A stretch of 64,000 nucleotides of DNA from Octopus bimaculoides (lineage: Eukaryota), in NCBI RefSeq assembly GCF_001194135.2, contig NC_069009.1, positions 9,605,452 through 9,669,451 on the forward strand, given 5' to 3'. The notes beneath the pieces are model-generated. The model did not search any database, was not told where the DNA came from, and was given only the letters and a program-made list of their open reading frames with translations. The position numbers and the translations under genes are program-made. Positions 27,131-49,847 of the stretch are shown piece after piece. Numbering within the stretch: the first letter of the stretch is position 1; every line of letters begins with the position of its first letter.

Positions 27131-27885
27131 GGTTTTGAAATTTAAATAAACTTTCACTTTCAATCAAGGTTCCAAAACCGCCCAAGGTATTTGTGTTGTG
27201 TACAGAGGTATGATCTTTCTGATGCACTACATTTCAGCCAGCCTGTTCAATTCAGTGAAGATCAATTGGAGGATTCATTCACAAAGGATCCACCATGGAA
27301 TTAGTACAGCAGTTGGAAATAAAATAAACAAATTTATCTGACAATCCAACATAAGTAATTTTCTCCTACACTGTGTTGATGCTATTAACAGTTTAAATGT
27401 TTAAGACAGACGAGAATAAGATTAAAAAAGGGTCCAGTCTTCTCTGCATGTTTAAGAGGTGTTCATTTGTTGGTAGACTGCCACAGACCAGGCTGTCAGC
27501 TACAAAAAAAACCCCTTTTTTCTACAGAGGGCAGAGGTATGAAGGATGTGGCAGCAGAAATACTACTAAATTCATGGTTTTGAGTGAAAAAAATCTTTCA
27601 AGGACGGGCTAAAGGAGTGTTTTAATTTACCCCACAACTTTCAAGGAACAAAGGGTGTTTCTGCAATTAATTTATAGTGTAAGTAGTAAGCCCCAAAGAA
27701 ATAGGGATGAGAGCAGTGGTGAAGTTGTTTAGTCTATCAAAGAAATTTATAATAAAAAAGATAAAAGCTCGAAATCTACAAAAGAAAAAGAATTGCTGGC
27801 TTTTTAGTAGGAATAACTTGTTTTGAGGGAGGGGGGATTAAAAAAAAAAACTTCGGAGGGGGGAGTGTGTGGCTCCACAGCATAT

Positions 27886-28000
27886 TTAGAGCACCTGGTT
27901 GTTACAATCCCTAGCATAGTGGCCTGTCGCCCTGCATGTATAGCACTGGGTTAGATTTAAACTAGGACACTCCTTGGCCAAGTGATCACTTTCACCACAC
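27886..28000 (-). other. Identical second copy of the CNBP-like last coding exon (probable assembly or haplotype duplication)
   Basis: About 27839-28012 is identical to about 28074-28247 (235-bp offset). The two copies are separated by a 10-N gap at 28013-28022. Confidence 0.8.
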
Positions 28001-28120
28001 CTAAAAGGCAAANNNNNNNNNNCTTTTGGGGGGATGGGTTGGTTTCTAAGAGCAGCACGCAAAACAAAATATTTAAAAAAAAAAACTTCGGAGGGGGGAG
28101 TGTGTGGCTCCACAGCATAT

Positions 28121-28235
28121 TTAGAGCACCTGGTTGTTACAATCCCTAGCATAGTGGCCTGTCGCCCTGCATGTATAGCACTGGGTTAGATTTAAACTAG
28201 GACACTCCTTGGCCAAGTGATCACTTTCACCACAC
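28121..28235 (-). CDS. CNBP: CNBP-like CCHC zinc-knuckle protein, coding exon 4 (last)
   Basis: Acceptor tttgccttttAG; phase 2 completes K in CYK|CGESDHLAKEC. Then PSLNLTQ-CYTCRATGHYARDC-NNQVL, with TAA at 28121-28123. Confidence 0.9.
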
Positions 28236-28336
28236 CTAAAAGGCAAACAGAAACATGAAATTAGATTACATAACTGAGGAGAAAGAGAAAACAAAAAAAA
28301 AAAGAGAAAACAAGAAAAAGAGAGAGAGCTACTAAC

Positions 28337-28541
28337 TTGTAACAGTTCTTGCCACTTTCTGGACAGCTCTTGGAGATGTGACCCGTCATACCACAGTTAT
28401 AGCACTTGCGGTCATCTCGTCGCTCATCAGAACACTCCCGAGCTATATGGCCAGCTACACCACATCGATAGCATGGTTTTGAGCTGGCCACCAGGCACTC
28501 CCTCTGGATGTGACCACTCTTGCCACAGTTGTAACATGATC
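28337..28541 (-). CDS. CNBP: CNBP-like protein, coding exon 3
   Basis: Acceptor cattgtAG, donor GTTAGT; 205 nt, phase 1 to 2. Encodes GSCYNCGKSGHIQREC..CYRCGVAGHIAREC..CYNCGMTGHISKSC..NCY. Confidence 0.92.
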
Positions 28542-28787
28542 CTACAATGTAAAATAACATTAACACCAAATAAAAGACAAACCACATAGAGGGCTCAGAC
28601 AGTCAAGAAAAAAATTTTTTTTTAAACTTCTAAACCCACTAAATAAGGCAATGACAGAGCCTGGACACAATCACTGAGGAACTGGCATGGCCACAGCTGA
28701 AATAGCTGTCACAACAAATGAACCTGAGGTTAAACATATACATCAATTATATGTGACCCATGGCCAGCTGAGAGAAACTGACCAGGA

Positions 28788-28940
28788 TTACCCTTTAGCA
28801 TTGAAACCTACCATATCAGGTCAAAATATTCTACCTGCTTTATGTTCAAACCAACTAGATCCTACCTCTCACATCTACCCTACATTGTCATGAATAAATA
28901 AGCAGTAGTTGAGAGAGTAATCTTAATGCTAAAGGGTTAA
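28788..28940. mobile_element. piggyBac-type MITE, internally deleted
   Basis: Ends CCCTTTAGCATT...AATGCTAAAGGG with TTA/TTAA flanks. Confidence 0.65.
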
Positions 28941-31064
28941 CTTGGGAAAGTGTAATTCTATATAAATCCTTCAGATACCCACCCCTCTTGGTTCTACAAC
29001 ACAAGCTTCAGGTTTTAAAGTGACCACTCTTCAAAATTTGATGGTAATTGGTACTCCAAACACCAGCTTAACATGGATATTTGGAAAATGATTTCTATGT
29101 AAATATAGTCACAAAGGGGTTACGAGTGAATACATAACTTGTATTGTAGAGTGAATGACTTCAACATTGCATCTAGGTTGGAAGAGAAGTATTCAAGCTG
29201 GTCTAGATAACCCAACTGATAGACAAAGCACACAACAGCTGCCCAACAACCTCCAACAAAAACAAGCAAACGGTATATTGTGACTGCATCTGCAGAGCCA
29301 ACAAAGCAGCAACCACATAATCACTCCATCTGCTATAAGTAGCAACTAGATTTCCCTCACAACCTACCAACTTAAAACAAAGGATTGAAAGGTTTTAAAC
29401 TCAAAACCTAACCAAAATATCCCAGATTTTGTCCCTTCACTGCTTCCTTCAATAACTAATTGCCAAAATTGACACAAACCACTTCAGTACTTGTATTTCA
29501 AGTAGAGAAGTATGGAAGGTACAAAGAAACACCACAGGTAGGTTGCCAGATAATTTAGTGTATGCTGTTGCAATGATTTCTATGGAGGGTATATAGCATA
29601 GTCTACGTAATCCCTAACACCAAATAAAAACAATGCTTCATTCAGTGCAACGCCAGCACTTAAGTCTTCAAAAATCAATATAACATTAAGCAATGTCAAG
29701 TGACGAGATGCTGCACTGGAGCAGATCTATGCTAGCAAGGGAAGGAAACAGTGGGGGGGGGGGCAGAGGAGCGAAAATGCAGACTTAAGAAAACAAGCAG
29801 AAAGACAAGCACAGAAGAGTGAGCAAATGCAGTGACATGCGTTCCAAGAAGTTGTTAGGAGGGCAAGGAAAAGATATTTTCAGGGAAAATATTAGCACAG
29901 TAATAAGGTGAGTTTACAATGTTTTAGTAGAATATTATTTTTAGTACAGACAAGAGGAGAATGCAAAGATAGATAATTATTGCTCCTTGTGAAAGTTTCA
30001 TACAAAATTAAACTATGAAAGGTCAGAGAGACTTTGAGATTGTCCTCACCCAGCGATTGTACTTGGTTGTCTTAATGTAGGACATGATAATGCAGTCTTA
30101 AGCACATTATAACTGAAACAGCAATTAATCAGTGGGTACCTGAATTTTTGGGGAAAACTAAGCAAGGATATGGTCTAAATCTAATTTAAAGTCCAACCTA
30201 GTAAAGAACATGGTGGCCATGTGCTTAAAGCCTGAACACAGCACCATCCAACAGTGTATCTAGGACTACATTACTTAATGTATCCTCCCTTGCTAATTGG
30301 CTGCATATCACCTTTTACTGACAATGTACACTCTTTCATTATGTGTATCTACTTAAAGATGTTTGGAGGAAATGTTTCCACATAGCTACATACTAATATT
30401 TTTTATCTGTTGTAGTAATAAGGAATACATGACGTCCAGCAGCATTTCTGCAATTTCAGCCATTGCGAGAAAAGTTGCTTTCCCCACCAACCTTCTCTTT
30501 CATAGCCTGCAACACTGGTGAATACCACATAATATACATATGCATTATATCCAGTGTGCAGGCATGGCACTTTGGAACTACATAGTTTTGGGTTCAGTCC
30601 CACTGCACAGTGCCATTGGCAACCATCTTCTACTATAGCCCTGGGCTAACCAATGCTTTCAGTGAATTTCTTTACTATGTGAAAGCCTGTCACGTGTGCG
30701 CATATGTCTTCTTACCTGCCACAACTCGCTTGACAACTAGTGTTGGTTTGTTTACAACCCTGTGATATAGCTATCAAGCAAAAGAGACTGATAGAATAAG
30801 CACCAGACTACAGAAGCCAATAAGCAAGGTGGCGGTACCTTGCCATGGTCACAGTCCAGATGACCAAAACAAGTAAAAGAGAGCAATGTGTAATTCAACA
30901 GCAACAAAGTTCACTAAAGTAAGCTATGTTATGTATGTTGTAGACAATCTGAGTTGCTCAATAAAGCCTCTGTACAAGACTATTTGCAGCTCGCCACTCG
31001 GACTGCCCTGAACACAAACTAGGAACTAGTCTCCCATCTTTCTTTATAGGGCCAGCCAATGCCT

Positions 31065-31289
31065 TTAACCCTTTAGCATTAAACCAGTCATATATGGCCC
31101 AAATATTCTATATTTTTATGTTCAAACTGGCTAGATCCAACTTCTCACACTTACGCTACAATGTCTTTCTAAAAGTAAACAACCACAGCATCAAAATCTC
31201 ATGGCTATGAGATAATGTATGAGTAATTCAAAACAATGTGAATAAATAAGATTTACATTGGACAATGATCTGAATGCTAAAGGGGTTAG
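31065..31289. mobile_element. piggyBac-type MITE
   Basis: TTAA|CCCTTTAGCATT...AATGCTAAAGGG(G)|TTAG. Related copies at about 16403-16620, 5150-5270 and 43630-43830. Confidence 0.7.
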
Positions 31290-32406
31290 CAAAATTGTTA
31301 GATTGTTAATAAATTGACATCCCATGCCTTCATTTGACACCAATGGGCAAAAATGGTGATGTGTTTATATTGTTTGACATTATGAAATTGTTTTCAATTT
31401 TCAAAGCCCAGTAGAATAAAAGCTTCCCTACAGGAAATTCTCCTTGCCTCGACAGCATATAGCTGTAAACCAGTGCCACTGCTATGTAAGGTGTGTGCTC
31501 CCAATCTTCCTTGAAAATGCCTGTGATCGTGGAGAAATATTACCTTACTTGGAAACAGGTGAAGAGTTGGCAATAGAAAGGGTATTCAGCTGTAGGAAAA
31601 TCCACCTTAAACTCCTCCTGACTCATGCAAGCACGGAAATATGAACATTAACAATTTTCATCTTCAGAGAAACTCACTGTAGGTTGGCAGCACCTAATAT
31701 CAAAAGCTTGCTCCCTATATTTCATTTTTGTCTTGCATGTCTGCTTTTACATAATTGGATTAACTAAAGCAGTAGATATGACATTTTATTGACATGTGCC
31801 CCTCACAGGAGGTTGTGGACTGTCTCGTAAGATAGTTTTTACTGTGTTATATACATATATTAAAAACTACCATATGATAGTTATATACACAGGCAGTGGA
31901 GGCACATAGTGGTTAGGGTGTTGCACTCATGAATTGTGGTTTTGATTCCTGGACTGGCTGATGTGTTGTGTTCTTGGGCACAACTATATTTCATGCAGCT
32001 CCAATCCACTCAGCTGGTAAAAATGAGTAATCCTGCGACAGACTGGCATCCCATCCAGGGGAGAACACATACACCAGAGAAATCAGCTCCATTGTTCCTT
32101 ACAGAATAATGTGGACTAACCCCTCCACCTCAATTCAGACACTAACAAACACAGGAAGAGAATGGGAAGATAAGAAGGCTTCAGATGAGATAAATGCTAA
32201 AAGCTGAAGAGAGAAATGAAGGCAATTATGAAATAATAGATGGAGACAACAGAAGGAAAGAAAGTTAAATTAATGTAAAAACATCTATCATACAGTCACT
32301 GCATGTCAGTGTTCTCCTTAGGAAAGCAATGCAAAAATTCAGAAGGTGAAGAAAAGTCACACGTAAGGTATTAAGTTTTGGCTGCCTATTTTATATTTAT
32401 CCAATG

Positions 32407-32686
32407 GAATTCTGGTTTAAGTATACCATATAAACCACCCCATAAGTTATCTTTTGGAATTTTCAGAAAATTCATTCAATTAGGGGGAGGGGGAACCCCC
32501 TACCACACACGGAGTGGGGTAGGGTCATGAGACGCTAGATCGCCCTGAAGAAAAAAAATTTTTTTTGCATGATCATGTGAATTTTCATATGTAGAAAACT
32601 AATTCGCAAAAAAATTTCTGAAAATTCACAAAAAATTTTTTTTTTTTTTAAATGAGGGGTTATACTGGGTGCTTAAACCAGAATTC
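32407..32686. mobile_element. MITE with a 15-bp perfect inverted repeat
   Basis: GAATTCTGGTTTAAG (32407-32421) / CTTAAACCAGAATTC (32672-32686). Similar internal sequence at about 46660-46960 and 49030-49320. Confidence 0.6.
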
Positions 32687-33926
32687 TGCTTATTTTTCTC
32701 TTAGGTGAAGTAAACATTTCTAGTTTAAAAATTAACTGTAACAATACCACAAATTTATTTTATATCCTATGGCACTAATAATTACCAGTGATGTTTGAAC
32801 AGTATTTAAATCGGTGTAAATTCCAAATCATAATTAACAACAAAAGTCAATACTGCTAAGAATGGGTCTTCAATTTCCCAAACTCTCACAACATACTAAA
32901 TGCATATTCTTGCCAAGGGAGAATGGCTTTCCTTTACTGCATTGACTCCTGTTGCTTGTAGAATCATTTGCTACTTTACAAATTACATCTAATTTATCAG
33001 AGTTGGCCCCAAGATTTCCAAGCACCATCAAAAATCTACTAGATTTCATTGGTGCTGCAACTAGGAATGGTAGAAGATATTCCCTGTGGGCTGTGCCAAA
33101 GAAATACCAACAGAACTACCAACTTGAGACAAAAAAAAAACCTAGACATTTCTTTTTAATTTTAAACATTTAGAAAACACCTCTGGCAATTGTTTGTGCA
33201 TGCATGACTTTTCTAACCCATCTGACTTTTCTATCCATCGGTGGAGATGGTTAATGAATACAATTTAGCTCCAGCTTGAACCTCCCCCGCCCCCAATTTA
33301 GAGAGAAAAAAAAAATTCAAGCTAGAAATTGAAACCAGCCCATTTTGTTTAATTTAAAATGGGATGAATTCTAAATGACTGGTTACTTTCCAAGGCTTGC
33401 CACCATCTGACAATCAACCACCAAAACATGGAGACTAAGTGATACTGCCACGTAAACACCACCATCACCTTTCAAACTTTAACCCCCAAGAACATTTACT
33501 ATCCCCCGAAAAAGAAAGAGGGAGATCCAAGCTAATATCAAAGACACTAAGTAATAATTAACCCCTTATATGTCAGGTGACCTAAAAACAAATACTCCCT
33601 TAGAAAATTATATAAAAGTAACTGGTTACATGTGTATGTAACTGTTAGCACACGGCAGTTGCTGCAAGTGCAACAACTACAATCAGGGGGAAAAGAGAGA
33701 GAGGATGCAGCAGAAGTAGGCAGGTGTGTGGCTAGGGTATTCAGATAACACCCTGGGTTAGAAGGGTTTTCAAGACAAATTGACCTAAATAAGGGGAAAC
33801 ATAGCTCATGCTTCTCAGGGAGAACACTGAATATTAGAAGGAAGAAGTTGGGAAAGGAGTTAAATAATAAATAATAATGATAATGTTCTATGCCAAAATT
33901 CTACATAGTTTTAGAGGTACACCTAC

Positions 33927-33983
33927 TTGACGAAGAATACTTATAGTTGCCAGTTCCATCTGTGCCACGAAACGGTGGCCCCT
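33927..33983 (-). CDS. Candidate in-frame cassette exon of the CNBP-like gene (57 nt, 19 codons)
   Basis: Acceptor cttaatttttcttttgcacAG, donor GTAGGT; phase 1-1 with no stop. Inserts EGPPFRGTDGTGNYKYSSSR in place of the junction Gly between knuckles 3 and 4. Confidence 0.55.
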
Positions 33984-34290
33984 CTGTGCAAAAGAAAAAT
34001 TAAGATAAGCTGATTAACAGGATTAACAAGAACATCAGGGGCGAGTTTTTAAGGCAAGCCACTGCACAAAAACTGTCAAGTTTCTGACCTCAGCTTCTAC
34101 GGCAAGTAATGTTTGACGTGGCACTAACTAATCCTTGTATCATGGCAACTCAAACTTATCTGTTACAGAAAATCTAGAAAACTGAGAGCAAATTTGGGGG
34201 TAAAAAATTTTTTTTTTTCAAAAGCAAATAATCAGTTCCAATATATGAAAACCATAACTATTTCATGTATAATACAATATAAACACACAC

Positions 34291-34304
34291 TGTGTGTGTG
34301 CGCA

Positions 34305-34336
<32 letters not shown>

Positions 34337-34350
34337 CGTATATATATACG

Positions 34351-34383
<33 letters not shown>

Positions 34384-34415
34384 GCATACATACATATGTA
34401 CATATATGCACACAT
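34291..34415. repeat. Compound (TG)n/(TA)n microsatellite
   Basis: Direct inspection. Similar tracts at about 1783-1800, 3285-3340, 3697-3752, 8000-8042, 9325-9375 and 42865-42910. Confidence 0.9.
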
Positions 34416-34911
34416 ACACCTGAGGTTCATGTGGCCTTCAGTCTTTCCAAAACATAAAATGGAACACCCCTAGAACACACCTGCCTCTATATAAGACAAA
34501 CACGCACACCCAAATAGAAGAAAAGAAAGGCGTGATGGATAGGAATGGTGCAGTATTCAAATGTGAGTATTTTGCCTGTGTATGAATATTTATATTTTAT
34601 ATACACATTTCATATACTCAAACTTTTAAAAGACTAGGTAGAGCCACCTGAGANNNNNNNNNNNNNNNNNNNNNNNNNNNNNNNNNNNNNNNNNNNNNNN
34701 NNNNNNNNNNNNNNNNNNNNNNNNNNNNNNNNNNNNNNNNNNNNNNNNNNNNNNNNNNNNNNNNNNNNNNNNNNNNNNNNNNNNNNNNNNNNNNNNNNNN
34801 NNNNNNNNNNNNNNNNNNNNNNNNNNNNNNNNNNNNNNNNNNNNNNNNNNNNNNNNNNNNNNNNNNNNNNNNNNNNNNNNNNNNNNNNNNNNNNNNNNNN
34901 NNNNNNNNNNN

Positions 34912-34949
<38 letters not shown>

Positions 34950-36250
34950 TAAAATGGTTTAACAGTTTGGTGTGGAAGCAACAAAACAAAAAAAAAAAAC
35001 AACAAAAACATTACAACCTTTTTTTTTTCATTAAATTATAAACAAAAATGTTCAAAAATAAAGCATGAAATACATAAAATTAAACACAGCCTCCTCAAGT
35101 CCTTTCACAACACAGACTGAATGTCTCTGAATCCTTAACCCATTTTCTTCCCATAGATCAGAACAATTTTCCAACAAAGAGCAGGCAGATCAAAATTTCA
35201 AACAAGAATTATCCCCCAGAAGAATTTGGAAGATTGGAAATCTTCCAGGTGGTGAAAAACCTCAACACAGATTCTTTCCACTATATCTACAGATAAATGA
35301 AGACAGGAAAAGCAACGATGAATTATTTATGTGTATGAATCTATGCCAAAGCTAACTGGAAATGGTACAGTGTCTTAGTTTAGTTACCTGCTCGCAATTG
35401 AAATTGAAAAAGGGCCACAAACCCAATGCCAGAAATTTAAATCCTGTTAGTTTCCACCACCCCATCATAATTATATTTTGCACAAGCCTCTACATGGATG
35501 TCAACATGCTAGAAATAGAAGCCAAATTCGTTTTAGATCACATTATTTTAAAGGACACTGCAGACACCCTCCATAAGATTGCCTATCCATTTAAACTTAG
35601 CAGTCAAACCACTGCCCCCCTCAATATCTCAAAGGAATGGTCCTGAGTGCACTGTAGCCACTGCTGTGAGAGGAACCTAGTTCATTACATTGCACGCAAA
35701 GATTGCAGTCACAGCAGATTAGGCTGGTGCAGGCATCGACAACCTTTTGCGAGAAGCCGGTTGCATGAAATATGGCTCATCATCTTGTGGGCTGCACTAT
35801 TTAAAAACGTTCAAGGTAAATTTCCAACAGGTAATGTCACCTAGAAAGATCCACAGGTTGCATGTGACCACAGTTTGGCTCTGACTGGGTATCTTCTCCC
35901 ATAGTCTTTTAGTGTCACTGGGTGAATAGAAGCGTAACAAATGAACTAAATTTGTTTGAGTACAGTGGATTACAACCATCTGGTGTGGGCACTGATCCCT
36001 TCAATTAATTTTAATAGAGTCCAGTTGCAAGAATTCAAACCAAATATCCATGCTTCCTTGTCTTGGAGGCCATGCCTAACAAAATCATAAAACAAGTAGA
36101 GAAAGCAGTAGAGAGAGGAAAGGGTAGAGCTAACAAGCGAGGAATCCGGGCGAATTAATGAGAGGGAAGGCAGAAAATAGTAGACATGGAAGGGGAAAGA
36201 AAAGAGAAAGGGAAATAAATATGCAAAGAAAACCAAGAAGCTTAACTTAC

Positions 36251-36376
36251 CACTATCTATTTCCTTATTACATTCTTTAGCAATATGGCCGTGTTCGTTG
36301 CACTTGTAACAACGGTCGATCTCCACTTTGCACTCTCTTGCAAAGTGACCGTAGCGGTTGCACTTGTAACACTTTT
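36251..36376 (-). CDS. CNBP: CNBP-like protein, coding exon 2
   Basis: Acceptor tttttattgcAG, donor GTAAGT; 126 nt, phase 1-1. Encodes [42 protein letters not shown]. Confidence 0.92.
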
Positions 36377-38079: not shown

Positions 38080-39965
38080 CCTGTGTTTTCTACGTGCTAC
38101 CTGCATGGGAGCCAGTCTGGTGGCACTGGCAATGACCACGCTCGAATGTTATTTTTCACAGGTCACCGACACAAGAGCCAATCCGTGGCCCAGGCAATGA
38201 CCACGCTCAGATATGCTTTTAATGTTCCACTGGCACAAGTGCCAATCAGGCAGTACTTTCATTAGCCATGTCAGCGATTTTTATTTGATTTCACTTGCCT
38301 CAATAGGTCTTTGCAAGCAAAGTTTATTGTCCAATGAATGAGGGATATTCATAAGTGGGCTGGTTACACCCACAGCATATCTCCAAAGGTATCGGTCACT
38401 AGTCATTGCCTCGGTAAGGCCCAGTGTTCGAAGGTCGTTCTTCACCACCTCGTCCCAGGTCTTCCTGGGTCTACCGCTTCCACAGGTTCCCTCAACTGCT
38501 ATGGTATGACACTTTTTCACACAACCTGTCCTCATCCATTCACAACACATGACCATACCAGTGCAGTCATCTCTCTTGCACACTACATCTGATGCTTCTT
38601 AAATCCAACTTTACACATGCATCATACAGTCTACCATTTACTCTGAGCGAGAGGCCCTTTGTCACCAGCAGAGGAGCTCTCTTAACTTTGCCCAAGTATT
38701 CTTATTCTAGCAGCCACACTTTCAGGGCATCCACCCCAGCTACTGACTTGGTCCCCTAGGTAACTGAAGCTATCAACTACTTGTAGTGACAGCAGCGGTT
38801 CTCTACACATTTTCGGTGTTTATAGTTACCTGAGCATTTGCCACATGCAAAAACTATCTTCCCAGTTAGACTTCCTTTGATATTGCTGCACCGCTTATTT
38901 GTCCATAGCTTACACTGGGTACATCTTATGTAGTTTCTACCTACACCTATTCTATGGATCAAGCAGGGCCATCTACCTGAAGGGATTTGTGGTTTGTCTG
39001 CCTTCCTACTTATTAAGACTTTGGTTTTAGCTAAGTCGGCTCTAAGGCCCTTCGATTCTAATCCTTGCTTCCACACATGAAACTTTTCCTCTAGTTCTGA
39101 TGGTGACTCAGCAATTAGAGCAAGGTCATCATTATAGAGGAGCTTCCAGGGGCATCCTGTCTTGAGTTCCTCTGTTATTGCTTGGAGGACTATGATGAAT
39201 AAGAGGGGGCTGAGGATTGAACCTTGGTGGACCCCTTCCCAGGATTCCTCACTGTACTCGTTGCCAAAGCTCACCTTACTGACAGCATCCCTGTACATGG
39301 CTTGCACAGCTCTCACTAACTATTCATCTATCCCTAGTTTCCTCATTGACCACCAGATAAATGATCAGGGAACCCTTTCAAAGGCTTTCTCCATGTCAAC
39401 GAAAGCCAGGTGCAGAGGTTTATCTTTGGCTAGGTATTTCTCCTGCAGCTGTGTTACCAGAAATATAGCATCAGTGGTGCATATACCTGGCACAAACCCA
39501 AACTGCATCTCATCTAAGCTGACTCTCTAATTAGTTGGGCTATGACCCTCTCCATGACCTTCATTACCTGATCCAACAACTTTATACCTCTGAAATAATT
39601 TTTATCTAAAGCATCACCTTTACTTTTGTAGCAGTTGACTATGTTGCTGCTACACCAGTGATTGGGTATGACCCCTTCATGTATCACCTGGTTAACTATA
39701 TAGATGACTAGGCTATAGCCAGCATTACCAGATATTTTGAGCATCCCTGCGGTGATTGCGGATGGACCGGGGGGAGGGGGTCTTTCCCTGCTGCCAGTAA
39801 GGTGAGCGTTGGCAACGAGTACAGTGAGGAATCCTGGGTAGGGGTCCACCCAGGATCAGTCCTCAGCCCCCTCTTATTCATCATAGTCCTCCAAGCAACA
39901 ACAGAAGAATTCAAGATAGGATACCCCTGGGAGCTCCTATGCTGATGACCTTGCTCTAATTGCTG
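38080..39965 (-). mobile_element. RTE-type LINE, degenerate and rearranged (RT core to 3' UTR)
   Basis: RGIKLLDQVMKVMERVI, GVHQGSILSPLLFIIVL, LLY(N/A)DDLAL, GRPRKTWDEVVKNDL. The RT segment QG..LSPLLF..YADD is present twice (about 39120-39290 and 39780-39965). Confidence 0.9.
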
Positions 39966-41811
39966 AGACACTTATAGCACCTAGGTTTACCAAGCGGTCA
40001 GCCATCGAAGTACTCACTAGGTTCGATGTTGCCTAACTTTGGTGATCGGATGAGAACTGGTGCTTTCAACGTAATATGACATACATACATACACATATGA
40101 AAAGCAGAGAATACACCTTTACGACAGGCTCTTACAGTTTTCATGTACCAGGTCACCCATAAAGCAGTCCAGAGTTCATACCAGTCAGCGTTAGTGGGAA
40201 TGAAACCTAAATCCAAAGCAACCTTACGCCAGCACCAACACACAAGTATCTAAAATGTAATTAGCACTGAATAACAAAAATAATCTTAAATATATATTGT
40301 ATTGCATAACCCAACATTAATTTTTCTCTAACTGCCTCACATCATCACTAGTGTTTCTCTGAAACCATTACCCCAGATTATTTTTAAATTGATCTTGTCA
40401 AGGCAAATACAGAGATATTCCATTCAACAATTTAATGACTGCCGTGGAACTTGAAGTTACAAAACTTGAAAATATCCTCATCTAACAGCTGTCCAGACTC
40501 CCTTACATTTATAAGACAAATGGCCCCATGGTTCTGGTGCCAGTGCAAGTAAGAAATGTTACTGTTAAGTAAGCAATTCAAGAAACTAAATTCAATAAAC
40601 TCTAAGTTTATTAAGCAATGTTTCACATTTAGTAATTCATAGCGCATACAAGTGAAGTGTGTATATATACATACATAACTGCATATTTCATTGTCGTAGG
40701 GCTGTGGAGTCGAAACAAAAAACTTCAACACCTCGACTATTGGTACCTCTGACTCCAACTCCCCTTTATGTAATTAAGTAATTGTGATCCACATATCTCC
40801 AAAGCATTTGCATACACTTGTATTTTGAGTAAACCTATATGTTATAACCATTTTATATTAAATAAAGATACAAGTTGGAGTTGCTAAAACTAAAGCAATT
40901 GATTCTAGCTACAGCTTAATTGTTTCCAACTCCAACTTCACAGCCCTGCAGTGTCCCACAAGTGTTTTAAATTTACCATCATCCAACTCATGCCAGCTTG
41001 GAAAAGCAGGCCTAAAAAAAGAGAGAGAGAGAGATACCAGTCTCAAGTCTACAAGCTCATTACACATTCTAGCCTAGTTAGAGACAAAAAATACAAGACT
41101 GCCAGGACTCCATTGTCATGAGCTACAAGCTGCTTGTAGTATTCTGGATTAGAGTAATAAGAAGTATGCGAGTACCTGTGTGCATACACTACCCATCATA
41201 AATAGCCCAAGCATGGCTGTATGATCATGAATTTTGCTTCGTAACCAGATAGTATTGGGTTCTGTCCCAGTGTGGCACTTCATGTGTCTTGTACTATTGC
41301 AGCTTTGTAATGACCAGTAATCTTGAGGGAAATTTAGCAGACAGAAATGGTACAATATCTATTTCAGCATGTGCCCCCATTTGAAAAGTAAACAAGCACT
41401 GGCAACTGTAAAGTTCGTTTTATTACCAATCTTAAGCTGTATACTATACATGGTACAACAGACATGCATCTACTGCAGCCATGAACTGATCAAAGCCTTC
41501 TCCACTGAATTAGTAGAAACCGTCATGTGTGTTCATGCATTCATCTTTTGTTCTTTGCATGCAAAGCATCAAACAAAAGAACAAAACTGATATCCTTTGC
41601 CAGTGGTTCACAGCCGTTTATTGCCAATGGACTCCCCCGATTCCTATTTTACTTTCCTGGACATAAAAATCTTGCTGCATTTTTATAATTGAATATTCGG
41701 AACTGTATTAAAAAATGTTCATATTTTGTGTATTGTAGAAGTATAATCAATTTACTGCAAAAATTTTAAAAGCAAAACTTTATATTGACCTCGTAAAATA
41801 CACCATTTCAA

Positions 41812-47462: not shown

Positions 47463-47595
47463 CACCGGTATTGTTTCGAGATCGCGGATCTCGCATGCCG
47501 GTATTACTCCGGCCTCCCATACCAGAGATAGTGCTGCGACACTCTCGCGCATAGTGTCCTGTTCTACTGCATTTATAGCACTTATCGTTACTCAT
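47463..47595 (-). CDS. CNBP: CNBP-like protein, coding exon 1 (ATG)
   Basis: Long polypyrimidine tract + CAG, and the exon begins A-ATG, so an upstream non-coding exon is required. Donor GTAAGT; 133 nt. Encodes MSNDKCYKCSRTGHYARECRSTISGMGGRSNTGMRDPRSRNNTG, similar to the vertebrate CNBP N-terminus MSSNECFKCGRSGHWAREC. Confidence 0.9.
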
Positions 47596-49847
47596 TCTGC
47601 AAAACAGGAAGAAAAAAAGAAAAGAAAAAACAGCAGTTAATTAAAAACAGACTAGAAAACCAACCACTAACAAAGATACATGAAACATCAATAGAGGAAC
47701 ACCATCACACATTGCTCCCCCACCAACTTTTACAATCAGGGGGGGGGGGGCTACACAGCCTCTTTTGTAGTTTTCCCATTACCAAATTGGTTGCCTGAGG
47801 ATGGGCCAACAAGACTTGCTTATGATGTTAGGCAGTTGTAAAAGAAACTTGTGAAACCAACTTCTTGATACGGCCATGCTTATACATGTTACATTTTATA
47901 ACCATCTTAATTTTTTATTTTTTTTTTACCTTTTACTTTGTTTCAGTCAGACTGGCTATGATGGGGTTTTGCCTTTTAGAACTTTGTCAAATATATCGAC
48001 CCACGTACCTATATTTTGTTATGTCTGGTATCTATTTTATCAGTCTTTTGCCAAACTGCCAAGTTACAGAAACGTAAGGAACACAGGTTGTCAAGTAGTG
48101 GTGGAGGACAGACACAAAGACAAACAATGGGCTTCTATCTGTTTCCATCCACCAAAACCACTCCAGTTTTAGTCAGCCCAAGGGTATGGTAGAAGATACT
48201 TACCGAAGGTATCACACAATGAAACTGAACCCGAAACCATGTGGTTGGGAAGCAAGCTTCTTACCACACAGCCATACAATACTTAACTAGATTTTAGAAA
48301 GACAGCTGCCAGACCTGAGATGCTCAGGACTCATCAAAAGGCATTGCTGCCAAAACAGCCTCGGCTTTTCATACACCAGGGAGTTACATATTCCTTATTT
48401 GAATAAAGCATGCATAGTATTTTAATATTCAACAGCTGCACGTGCAGATGATATAAACTGACTCCCGGTAGAAACAATAAGTTAGCTCCCCTTATCCTTT
48501 CTTATTTACAATTTCAGCGACTACTGAATGTTCCAGTAACTGCTTTCAGGAGATAAATGACCAATGTACTGCGATAAATTCCTCTCAGTAGCAAGAGACC
48601 ACTGACAGCATCCCCCACCCCACTTTCTTATTTTTTTGGAATTTTCATAAAATTTTTGCGAATTGCGTTCTCCACGGAGGCAGAGTGACCGAGACCTGTG
48701 GCAATATACCGTGCCTGAGAAGACCTGTCAAGCCAAGTGAGATCGGAGTCGCGGCCAATGTCTGTGTTTCGTAACTGGCACGTAAAGAGCACCCACTACA
48801 CTCTTGGAGTGGATGGCGTTAGGTAGGGCATCCAACTGTAGAAACCATGCCAAATCAGATTGAAACCTGGTACAGCTCTCCAGCTTACCAGTTTTCAGTC
48901 ACTGTCCAACCCATGCCAGCATGGAAAACGGACGTTAAATGAGACAAATCCGTTATGCTTAAAAAATTTTTTTTTTATTTTTTACACTCCATCTTCCAAC
49001 GTCCAAAAAGTTTTATTCGAATTTTTTTTAAAGCAGATTTTAAAATACGGAGTTTGGTTTTGTTTAAATCTCAGCAATGGGCAATCCTTGGGGGGCATCA
49101 TCATTCCAGTAGGTGTTTATGGGGAGAAAAATATTGTCAGAGTGACAAAGAAACGGGGAGGGTATCAGGTGGTCGTGAGATGTGCTAAAAACAGCTAAAT
49201 CACATAAAAAAATCGTATGAATTCCCACGTGTAGAACACAAATTAGCAAGTTTTCTGAAAATTCCAAAAAAATAGGTTAATGAGGAATTTATATAGGTAC
49301 TTAAAAATCAGAATTCCGTCGAATATGGTTATAGAGGCCCTGGTGCAGGATGTGGGTTGTGCGACTGAGGGGTGGGGGTGTAAACGCTTAAACCGAAATC
49401 TCGTTAACTGGTACATTTGCGGTCAGAGAGTGTCAACAGCTTCGTGATTGAAACTCAGAACAAATATTCTTCTACCAATCCAAATAGCACCACTGAGGAG
49501 TATTACAAGACTTTCTCCTCACCACCACCCCTTAAAAAAATTTTAATTCCGACCCCACTCTTTTCGGCTACGGGAATTACTAATCTGCAAAAAAAAATTG
49601 GCAAAATCGACAATTTTTAAATTTTTTAAATAAACAAATTTGGGGGGAAACGGTGGACGGGGACGAGCGGAAGTCTTTCCCCAGAGTAGTCTTCGGCAAG
49701 ATTTTAACTCATGATTTAAGAGATTAACTCTATATATCACAATTACACTACAATTAATAAAAAAAACGTTTTTATTGCCTTAGGGTAATGTAATAGTAAC
49801 AATCAATTATCCTCTTATAATACCACCTTCCCCCATATCATTTCTGG

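What the first reader, a model, noticed from the sequence alone, without database searches (positions are those of the whole stretch)
33927..33983. Hidden in-frame 57-nt cassette exon between knuckles 3 and 4
Seen: not in the ORF track. It has a branch-like CTTAAT, a U-rich tract, CAG, exactly 57 nt and donor GTAGGT. Its phase (1-1) matches the flanking exons with no stop, changing DS-G-SCYNC to DS-EGPPFRGTDGTGNYKYSSSR-SCYNC. The surrounding intron is TE-poor. Established: vertebrate CNBP has only small splice variants affecting linker length. Inference: regulated (for example neural) splicing inserts a 19-aa Gly/Ser/aromatic linker that would re-space the two knuckle clusters and could alter RNA target selection.
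Basis: partly seen in the sequence, partly recalled or inferred. Interest (0 to 1): 0.7.

Follow-up and report, generated by a model that had tools for sequence, protein, structure and literature searches.

The report
Unproven 57-nt exon candidate in CNBP
A 57-base stretch inside an intron of an octopus-like CNBP gene does look like a small in-frame exon, but no data reachable here show it is ever spliced in, and it is somewhat more likely a decoy "pseudo-exon" than a real alternative exon.

Summary
On the minus strand, 33983..33927 is a 57-nt stretch with branch-like CTTAAT, a U-rich tract and CAG upstream, and GTAGGT downstream. It lies in the 7.7-kb intron between the exons for knuckles 2-3 and 4-6 of an eight-knuckle CNBP-like gene. 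Read in phase 1-1 it has no stop and turns DS-G-SCYNC into DS-EGPPFRGTDGTGNYKYSSSR-SCYNC.

It is mildly unusual:
- Its splice-site scores fall within the range of the gene's real sites.
- It is the only in-frame candidate of that quality in the intron; chance expectation is about 0.05 per intron (about 0.24 with a looser statistic).
- It is unique in the 2.34-Gb genome, so it is not derived from a recognisable repeat.
- Its composition is exon-like: GC 0.49 and CpG o/e 0.88, in an intron with GC 0.37 and CpG o/e 0.22.

The interpretation (regulated, perhaps neural, inclusion) could not be tested. No cephalopod transcript, protein or genome other than this assembly was reachable.

Against a functional insert: the knuckle 3-4 linker is 8-9 residues in the 16 orthologues with the same layout that were examined.

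Estimates: pseudo-exon 0.55, genuine lineage-specific cassette exon 0.35, other 0.1. RNA-seq junction reads or RT-PCR would settle it.

The parts
33927..33983 (-). Candidate 57-nt cassette exon (or pseudo-exon). In phase 1-1 it encodes (E)GPPFRGTDGTGNYKYSSS(R).
   Evidence: GC 0.49, 3 CpG, CpG o/e 0.88. Single copy in the genome.
33984..34010 (-). Putative 3' splice region: branch-like CTTAT/CTTAAT (34009-33999), U-rich tract, and CAG (33986-33984). No AG lies between the branch-like motifs and the CAG.
   Evidence: Generic PWM acceptor score 4.44, against 8.5, 1.4, -1.5 and 5.1 for the gene's real acceptors.
33921..33926 (-). Putative 5' splice site: CAA|GTAGGT.
   Evidence: Generic PWM donor score 3.30, against 5.5, 5.5 and 0.8 for the real donors.
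33927..33959 (-). Nested 33-nt version that uses an internal AG (cacAG|ATGG) and the same donor. It is also in frame: (D)GTGNYKYSSS(R).
   Evidence: Acceptor score 2.3.
36251..36376 (-). CNBP coding exon 2 (knuckles 2 and 3). Ends …EIDS + G| in phase 1, with donor GTG|gtaagt.
28542..36250 (-). Intron 2 (7709 nt, including 258 N), which hosts the candidate.
   Evidence: CpG o/e 0.22.
28337..28541 (-). CNBP coding exon 3 (knuckles 4-6). Starts |GA TCA TGT… (G-SCYNC).
47463..47595 (-). CNBP first coding exon (ATG at 47595, knuckle 1, weak Arg/Gly linker). Ends in phase 1.
28121..28235 (-). CNBP last coding exon (knuckles 7-8, stop TAA).

Best explanation
The 57 nt are most likely an intronic pseudo-exon. 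This means a unique stretch of intron 2 of the CNBP-like gene that happens to carry a usable-looking 3' splice site, a moderate 5' splice site and an open phase-1 frame, but is normally skipped. The mature mRNA would then join exon 2 directly to exon 3 and give the conserved 8-residue knuckle 3-4 linker NKEIDSGS.

Shown: the signals, the frame, the uniqueness and the composition.

Inferred: non-inclusion. This rests on base rates (decoy exons outnumber real hidden exons in long introns; established knowledge, e.g. Sun and Chasin 2000, cited from memory) and on the length conservation of the linker.
For: - Bare in-frame open AG..GT pairs are abundant: 167 in this intron.
- Pairs with comparable splice scores in any frame occur about once per 6 kb of strand in this window (22 in 128 kb) and about once per 9 kb in other DNA of this genome (37 in 321 kb).
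- An in-frame one of this quality is expected 0.05 to 0.24 times per intron, depending on the statistic. Over the gene's 18.8 kb of introns, and with post-hoc thresholds, that is not significant.
- The orthologous intron of an unrelated invertebrate (L015) also holds a non-homologous in-frame candidate with the same summed score, 7.66.
- The knuckle 3-4 linker is 8 residues (xxE[IV]xxG[SA]-like) in 15 orthologous proteins or transcripts with this architecture and 9 in a 16th. Other linkers vary widely.
- The phase-1 intron in the Gly codon is shared by L014 and L015, which have no cassette.
- No retrocopy or paralogue in the genome carries the insert.
Against: - By the standard of the gene's own weakest functional splice sites, this locus is the only in-frame candidate in the intron.
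- Its composition is exon-like. GC >= 0.49 together with >= 3 CpG per 57 nt occurs in about 1.4% of windows of this CpG-depleted intron, against 34% of windows in the gene's coding sequence.
- The three CpGs lie inside the exon boundaries. The nearest outside are 60 nt upstream and 273 nt downstream.
- It is not repeat-derived.
- Non-inclusion was not observed. It is only inferred.
Confidence: 0.55

Rival explanations
1. It is a genuine, lineage-specific alternative cassette exon. When exon definition succeeds on the CAG acceptor and GTAGGT donor, 57 nt are spliced between exons 2 and 3. The Gly of the linker is then replaced by EGPPFRGTDGTGNYKYSSSR. This would be a Gly/Ser/Thr/Tyr-rich, presumably disordered spacer that lengthens the knuckle 3-4 linker from 8 to 27 residues. 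It could change how the first three and last five knuckles engage nucleic acid. Tissue regulation (neural or other) would be an added, untested layer.
For: - Correct phase with no stop.
- Splice-site scores within the range of the gene's real sites.
- Nominal chance P of about 0.04-0.05.
- The only qualifying locus in the intron.
- Exon-like GC and CpG retention confined to the exon.
- Unique sequence.
- No competing ncRNA or structure explanation.
- Plausible branch points at -17 and -23, with an AG-free zone before the acceptor.
Against: - There is no expression evidence of any kind.
- The thresholds were set post hoc and the PWM is generic.
- The linker it would expand is the most length-conserved one in the family.
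- No insert is seen at this position in any orthologue with this layout. One divergent acanthocephalan protein, P0021, has a 33-residue linker that may be equivalent, but its homology was not examined.
- The exon begins with a GGGG run and its donor contains UAGG. In vertebrates these motifs act as exonic/5'ss silencers (from memory: Han et al. 2005; not tested here, and transfer to cephalopods is uncertain).
Confidence: 0.35
2. The GC- and CpG-rich patch is constrained for a reason other than coding, and its exon-like look is incidental. Possibilities are an intronic regulatory element (a splicing or transcription factor binding site) or an exon of some other rare transcript.
For: - Local CpG o/e is 0.88, inside a unique 1.6-kb stretch whose o/e is 0.18 without it.
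- About six or seven other small CpG clusters exist in the same intron without exon-like signals, so such patches need not be exons.
Against: - No Rfam match, and a fold no more stable than shuffles (z = +0.91).
- The plus strand has no AG/GT at these boundaries.
- Nothing positive points to any specific element.
Confidence: 0.1

Closest known systems
Intronic pseudo-exons (decoy or false exons) of long metazoan introns
   Same: Flanked by AG and GT with decent consensus matches, of ordinary exon size, and sited deep in a long intron (2.3 kb from exon 2, 5.4 kb from exon 3). There is no evidence of inclusion.
   Different: It is in frame and free of stops, more GC- and CpG-rich than its surroundings, and the single best candidate in its intron. 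Typical decoys have no such coincidence of features.
Vertebrate CNBP (ZNF9) splice isoforms
   Same: The same gene family. The isoforms differ by small in-frame changes in linker regions rather than in the knuckles (from memory: alternative 5' splice sites giving alpha/beta forms that differ by a few residues near the RGG box).
   Different: The vertebrate variants lie between knuckles 1 and 2 and arise from alternative splice-site choice, not from a separate cassette exon. Here the putative insert is 19 residues, lies between knuckles 3 and 4, and is unverified.
Lineage-specific in-frame cassette exons encoding disordered linkers in RNA-binding proteins
   Same: Short, symmetric (length a multiple of 3), and encoding a low-complexity Gly/Ser/Tyr-rich segment between folded domains.
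   Different: Known cases are defined by transcript evidence and usually by conserved flanking intron sequence. Neither is available here.
Neural microexons (Srrm4/eMIC-dependent)
   Same: A UGC lies just upstream of the acceptor (ttttGCacag), where the vertebrate Srrm4-responsive motif sits (from memory).
   Different: 57 nt is above the usual microexon limit (<= 27 nt, at most 51). A single UGC is expected by chance about one time in five. No UGCAUG lies within 300 nt.

Membership tests
CNBP / ZNF9 family (host gene) | Seven or more tandem CCHC zinc knuckles (C-x2-C-x4-H-x4-C) making up almost the whole small protein | tested here: met
   192-aa product with 8 knuckles. Pfam zf-CCHC E = 1.1e-49 with 8 stretches.
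CNBP / ZNF9 family (host gene) | Arg/Gly-rich (RGG) linker between knuckles 1 and 2 | tested here: inconclusive
   The linker RSTISGMGGRSNTGMRDPRSRNNTGEK is long and contains Arg and Gly, but has no RGG triplet.
CNBP / ZNF9 family (host gene) | Closest relatives are proteins named CNBP, with a shared architecture and a shared intron position | tested here: met
   - Human CNBP aligns to all four coding exons.
- Best database relatives (40-51% identity) include proteins named 'cellular nucleic acid-binding protein' and share the 6-aa and 8-aa linkers.
- The phase-1 intron in the Gly codon is shared with L014 and L015.
- A reciprocal-best-hit test was not done.
Alternative cassette exon | Functional-looking 3' splice site (branch point, polypyrimidine tract, AG) and 5' splice site (GT) | tested here: met
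   The scores lie within the range of the gene's real sites. The PWM is generic and approximate.
Alternative cassette exon | Frame-preserving and free of stops in the phase set by the flanking exons | tested here: met
Alternative cassette exon | Inclusion in mature mRNA in at least some condition | not testable with these tools
   No transcript data for this species or its relatives could be reached. Even the canonical product is absent from the collections.
Alternative cassette exon | Conservation of the exon, its splice sites and its frame in related species | not testable with these tools
   No cephalopod genome other than G000 is available. The distant orthologous introns L014 and L015 have no homologue, which is uninformative for a lineage-specific exon.
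TE-derived (exonised repeat) exon | The sequence belongs to an interspersed repeat family | tested here: not met
   The 321 nt around it have one copy in 2.34 Gb. The surrounding 1.6 kb has no other match. The search skips very common words, so very old or very short repeats could escape.
Neural microexon | Length <= 27 nt (at most 51 nt) | tested here: not met
   57 nt. The nested 33-nt version would fit only the loose limit.
Intronic structured ncRNA (snoRNA or miRNA hosted in a housekeeping gene's intron) | Match to a known RNA family, or unusually stable folding | tested here: not met
   No Rfam match at 33850-34080 even at E <= 1. Fold z-score +0.91.

The most novel reading that the evidence does not exclude
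An octopod- or cephalopod-specific, regulated in-frame cassette exon inserts a 19-residue Gly/Ser/Thr/Tyr-rich spacer into the one CNBP linker (knuckle 3-4) whose length stays at 8-9 residues in the orthologues examined. This would create an isoform in which the first three and last five zinc knuckles are decoupled and may select different single-stranded nucleic-acid targets.
Probability: 0.3. Interest if true: 0.4.

Novelty: new member of a known kind. Interest (0 to 1): 0.25.

Why it matters
CNBP is a conserved single-stranded nucleic-acid chaperone, and the spacing of its knuckles is thought to set how it grips G-rich RNA and DNA.

If the exon is real, it would be a natural experiment in re-spacing the knuckles. 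It would also be an example of isoform innovation in a cephalopod housekeeping RNA-binding protein. That is of moderate interest to specialists, but it belongs to a well-known class (lineage-specific cassette exon).

If it is a pseudo-exon, it is ordinary. Its value is then as a reminder that a coincidence of splice signals and frame at P of about 0.05-0.2 per intron will turn up repeatedly in a genome scan.

Tried and rejected
- **Repeat or TE origin.** Rejected. The sequence has a single copy in the genome.
- **Retrocopy or paralogue carrying the insert, as a fossil of inclusion.** None found.
- **Structured ncRNA.** No Rfam hit and no stable fold.
- **Isoform in protein databases.** A search centred on the insert, a full-length search, an exon-3 ORF search and exact look-ups were all empty. 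They are uninformative because no cephalopod CNBP, not even the canonical product, is in the collections.
- **Degenerate DNA pattern for the peptide in metagenome contigs.** No match.
- **Relatives of exon 3 in metagenome contigs.** At most 66% identity and no cephalopods. These hits served only to extend the linker-length survey.
- An invented exon-2-skipped isoform was accepted, so the check is not annotation-based.
- **Literature.** Nothing on cephalopod CNBP splicing.
- **Rbfox, Nova and PTB motif counts in the flanks.** Nothing beyond chance.

Full report
**Host gene**

The window is a piece of a 2.34-Gb, 145,327-contig animal assembly (C29:9605452-9669451). On the minus strand it carries a CNBP-like gene.
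- tblastn with human CNBP (sequence from memory) and direct reading locate four coding exons: 47595..47463, 36376..36251, 28541..28337 and 28235..28121.
- Spliced together they give a 192-residue protein with eight CCHC knuckles (Pfam zf-CCHC E = 1.1e-49 with 8 stretches).
- All junctions have AG/GT.
- Exons 1 and 2 both end in phase 1. Exon 3 begins with the last two bases of a Gly codon, which gives …EIDS-G-SCYNC….

**Observation**

- On the minus strand the sequence reads gcttatCTTAATttttcttttgcaCAG|AGGGGCC…TTCGTCAA|GTAGGTg.
- The exon candidate is 33983..33927, 57 nt.
- G+57 nt+GA translates to EGPPFRGTDGTGNYKYSSSR without a stop, so 19 residues are added between knuckles 3 and 4.
- No AG lies between the branch-like motifs (A at -17 or -23) and the CAG.
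- A nested acceptor (cacAG|ATGG, exon start 33959) would give a 33-nt in-frame version.

**Is it more than chance?**

Bare AG..GT pairs that are in frame and open are common: 167 in the 7709-nt intron.

I scored splice sites with a generic metazoan position-weight matrix written from memory, so it is approximate.
- The candidate scores 4.44 for the acceptor and 3.30 for the donor.
- The gene's real acceptors score 8.5, 1.4, -1.5 and 5.1. Its real donors score 5.5, 5.5 and 0.8.
- The candidate is therefore well inside the functional range.

Requiring both sites to be at least as good as the candidate's, a length of 27-300 nt that is a multiple of 3, and an open phase-1 frame:
- The candidate is the only hit in the whole window on either strand.
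- Markov-1 simulations of the intron give 0.047 hits per intron, with P(>=1) = 0.043.
- 320 kb of other DNA from the same genome gives 0.046 per 7.45 kb.
- With the looser 'sum of scores' statistic the rate is about 0.24 per 7.7 kb.
- The orthologous 6.9-kb intron of an unrelated invertebrate contig (L015) contains a non-homologous in-frame candidate with the same summed score.

The thresholds were fixed after seeing the candidate, and the gene has 18.8 kb of introns. The honest significance is therefore marginal, roughly 0.1-0.4 for the gene.

**Composition**

- The 57 nt have GC 0.49 and three CpGs (o/e 0.88). Intron 2 has GC 0.374 and CpG o/e 0.22.
- The unique 1.6 kb around the cassette has CpG o/e 0.18 once the cassette is removed.
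- The three CpGs are all inside the exon. The nearest outside are 60 nt upstream and 273 nt downstream.
- GC >= 0.49 together with >= 3 CpG occurs in about 1.4% of 57-nt windows of the intron, against 34% of windows of the gene's coding sequence.
- This is the strongest argument for a real exon. It was looked at post hoc, it is partly correlated with having an open frame, and about six or seven other CpG clusters exist in the intron.

**Alternative identities**

- Repeat: the 321 nt around the cassette have a single copy in the genome. A 2.35-kb query shows repeats only at about 32402-32699 and a palindromic microsatellite at 34291-34394. The candidate is therefore not an exonised repeat.
- The intron as a whole is not TE-free. 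A ~220-nt SINE-like element at about 31063-31284 drew more than 17,000 first-look candidates.
- ncRNA: there is no Rfam match at the cassette even at E <= 1. The local fold is no better than shuffles (z = +0.91).
- Plus strand: no splice-like boundaries there.
- Retrocopy: no retrocopy or paralogue in the genome contains the insert.

**Expression and conservation**

These are the decisive data, and they were unreachable.
- The protein collections contain no cephalopod CNBP. Searches with the insert isoform, the canonical protein and the exon-3 ORF gave nothing above about 50-73% identity.
- Exact look-ups of both isoforms failed, so the absence of the insert isoform means nothing.
- A degenerate pattern for the peptide found nothing in metagenome contigs. 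A search for exon-3 relatives there found only distant invertebrates.
- The paper library holds nothing on cephalopod CNBP splicing.

**What the distant relatives do show**

- In the 12 proteins and 4 transcript contigs that share the octopus architecture, the knuckle 3-4 linker is 8 residues in 15 (NKEIDSGS, DKEIDSGA, ENEVESGS, …) and 9 in one. That architecture is a long linker, then 6 residues, then 8 residues, then 7 residues.
- The knuckle 1-2, 5-6 and 6-7 linkers vary several-fold in length.
- Two genomic contigs from other invertebrates (L014, L015) have the same phase-1 intron in the Gly codon and no cassette.
- The insert would therefore expand the most length-constrained linker of the family. 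This lowers, but does not exclude, the likelihood of a functional isoform.

**Weighing**

- I took a prior of about 2% that a 7.7-kb intron in an invertebrate RNA-binding-protein gene hides a real in-frame cassette. This is my estimate, not a measurement.
- I took about 0.3 for the chance that a real alternative exon has sites this good, and 0.05 for a chance pseudo-exon. The odds before composition are then about 0.13.
- An exon-like composition factor of about 6-9 and a linker-conservation penalty of about 0.5-0.7 bring the odds to about 0.4-0.8. I take the lower part of that range, because the composition factor was found post hoc.
- I therefore give pseudo-exon 0.55, genuine alternative exon 0.35 and other constrained element 0.10.
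- Nothing supports neural specificity. There is no UGCAUG within 300 nt, one GCAUG lies 116 nt downstream, and one UGC lies before the acceptor. All of this is at chance level.
- From memory, an exonic GGGG run and a UAGG at the donor are silencer-type motifs in vertebrates. That would fit either a skipped or a tightly regulated exon. It was not tested.

**Comparison with what is known, and novelty**

- The closest known things are intronic pseudo-exons, the small linker-length isoforms of vertebrate CNBP (which sit in a different linker and arise by a different mechanism), and lineage-specific cassette exons encoding disordered linkers.
- It is not a microexon by length and not a TE exonisation.
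- Under either reading it is an instance of a known kind.
- If real, it would be a modestly interesting new isoform of a conserved nucleic-acid chaperone.

**Verdict**

Interest is low to moderate (0.25). RNA-seq junction counts or a single RT-PCR would decide it.

Noticed in passing
window 27881-28011 vs 28116-28241, with a 10-N gap at 28013-28022: The last coding exon of the CNBP gene, with its acceptor and the start of the 3' UTR, is present twice on either side of a 10-N gap. Wherever the two copies were compared they matched. This is most likely an assembly artefact at a gap rather than a real tandem duplication.
   Followed up: partly
window 39969-40086 (-), in CNBP intron 1: A full-length Rfam 5S rRNA match (64.2 bits, gathering score 38). 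It abuts a ~184-nt repeat (39789-39972) that has thousands of first-look candidates and an inverted copy at 39103-39287, and it lies near an RVT_1-like ORF (38777-39319, E = 1.7e-12). The 40 scored repeat copies do not include the 5S part. It therefore looks like a lone 5S pseudogene, or a chimeric retro-insertion next to LINE fragments, rather than a 5S-headed SINE family.
   Followed up: partly
window about 31063-31284 and 32402-32699 (CNBP intron 2): Two interspersed repeat families. The first is a ~220-nt SINE-like element, 81-87% identical to copies on many chromosomes, with more than 17,000 first-look candidates. The second is a ~150-nt element whose copies hit on both strands (MITE-like or with inverted arms).
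   Followed up: partly
window 34291-34394: A palindromic TA/CA microsatellite. It produces a string of sub-threshold miRNA 'hits' (mir-297, mir-466 and others) on both strands. These are spurious low-complexity matches.
   Followed up: yes
CNBP introns (28542-36250) vs 200 kb sampled elsewhere in G000 (L016-L035): Intron 2 of this housekeeping gene is strongly CpG-depleted (o/e 0.22) compared with a random 200-kb genome sample (o/e 0.72). Coding exons 1-2 keep an o/e above 1. This is consistent with gene-body methylation of a highly expressed gene, which was not tested.
   Followed up: no
L014 10207/11121 and L015 10144/17026; window 36251/28541: The phase-1 intron splitting the Gly codon of the knuckle 3-4 linker (…ID[SA]-G|-[SA]CYNC) is shared between this gene and CNBP genes on two invertebrate host contigs from ENA metagenome assemblies. 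This indicates an old intron position. L015's intron also carries a piggyBac-like transposase ORF (DDE_Tnp_1_7).
   Followed up: partly
window 47596-47599 (-): The first coding exon is preceded by a strong acceptor (ttttgcag|A ATG). The gene therefore has at least one non-coding 5' exon further upstream, which was not located.
   Followed up: no
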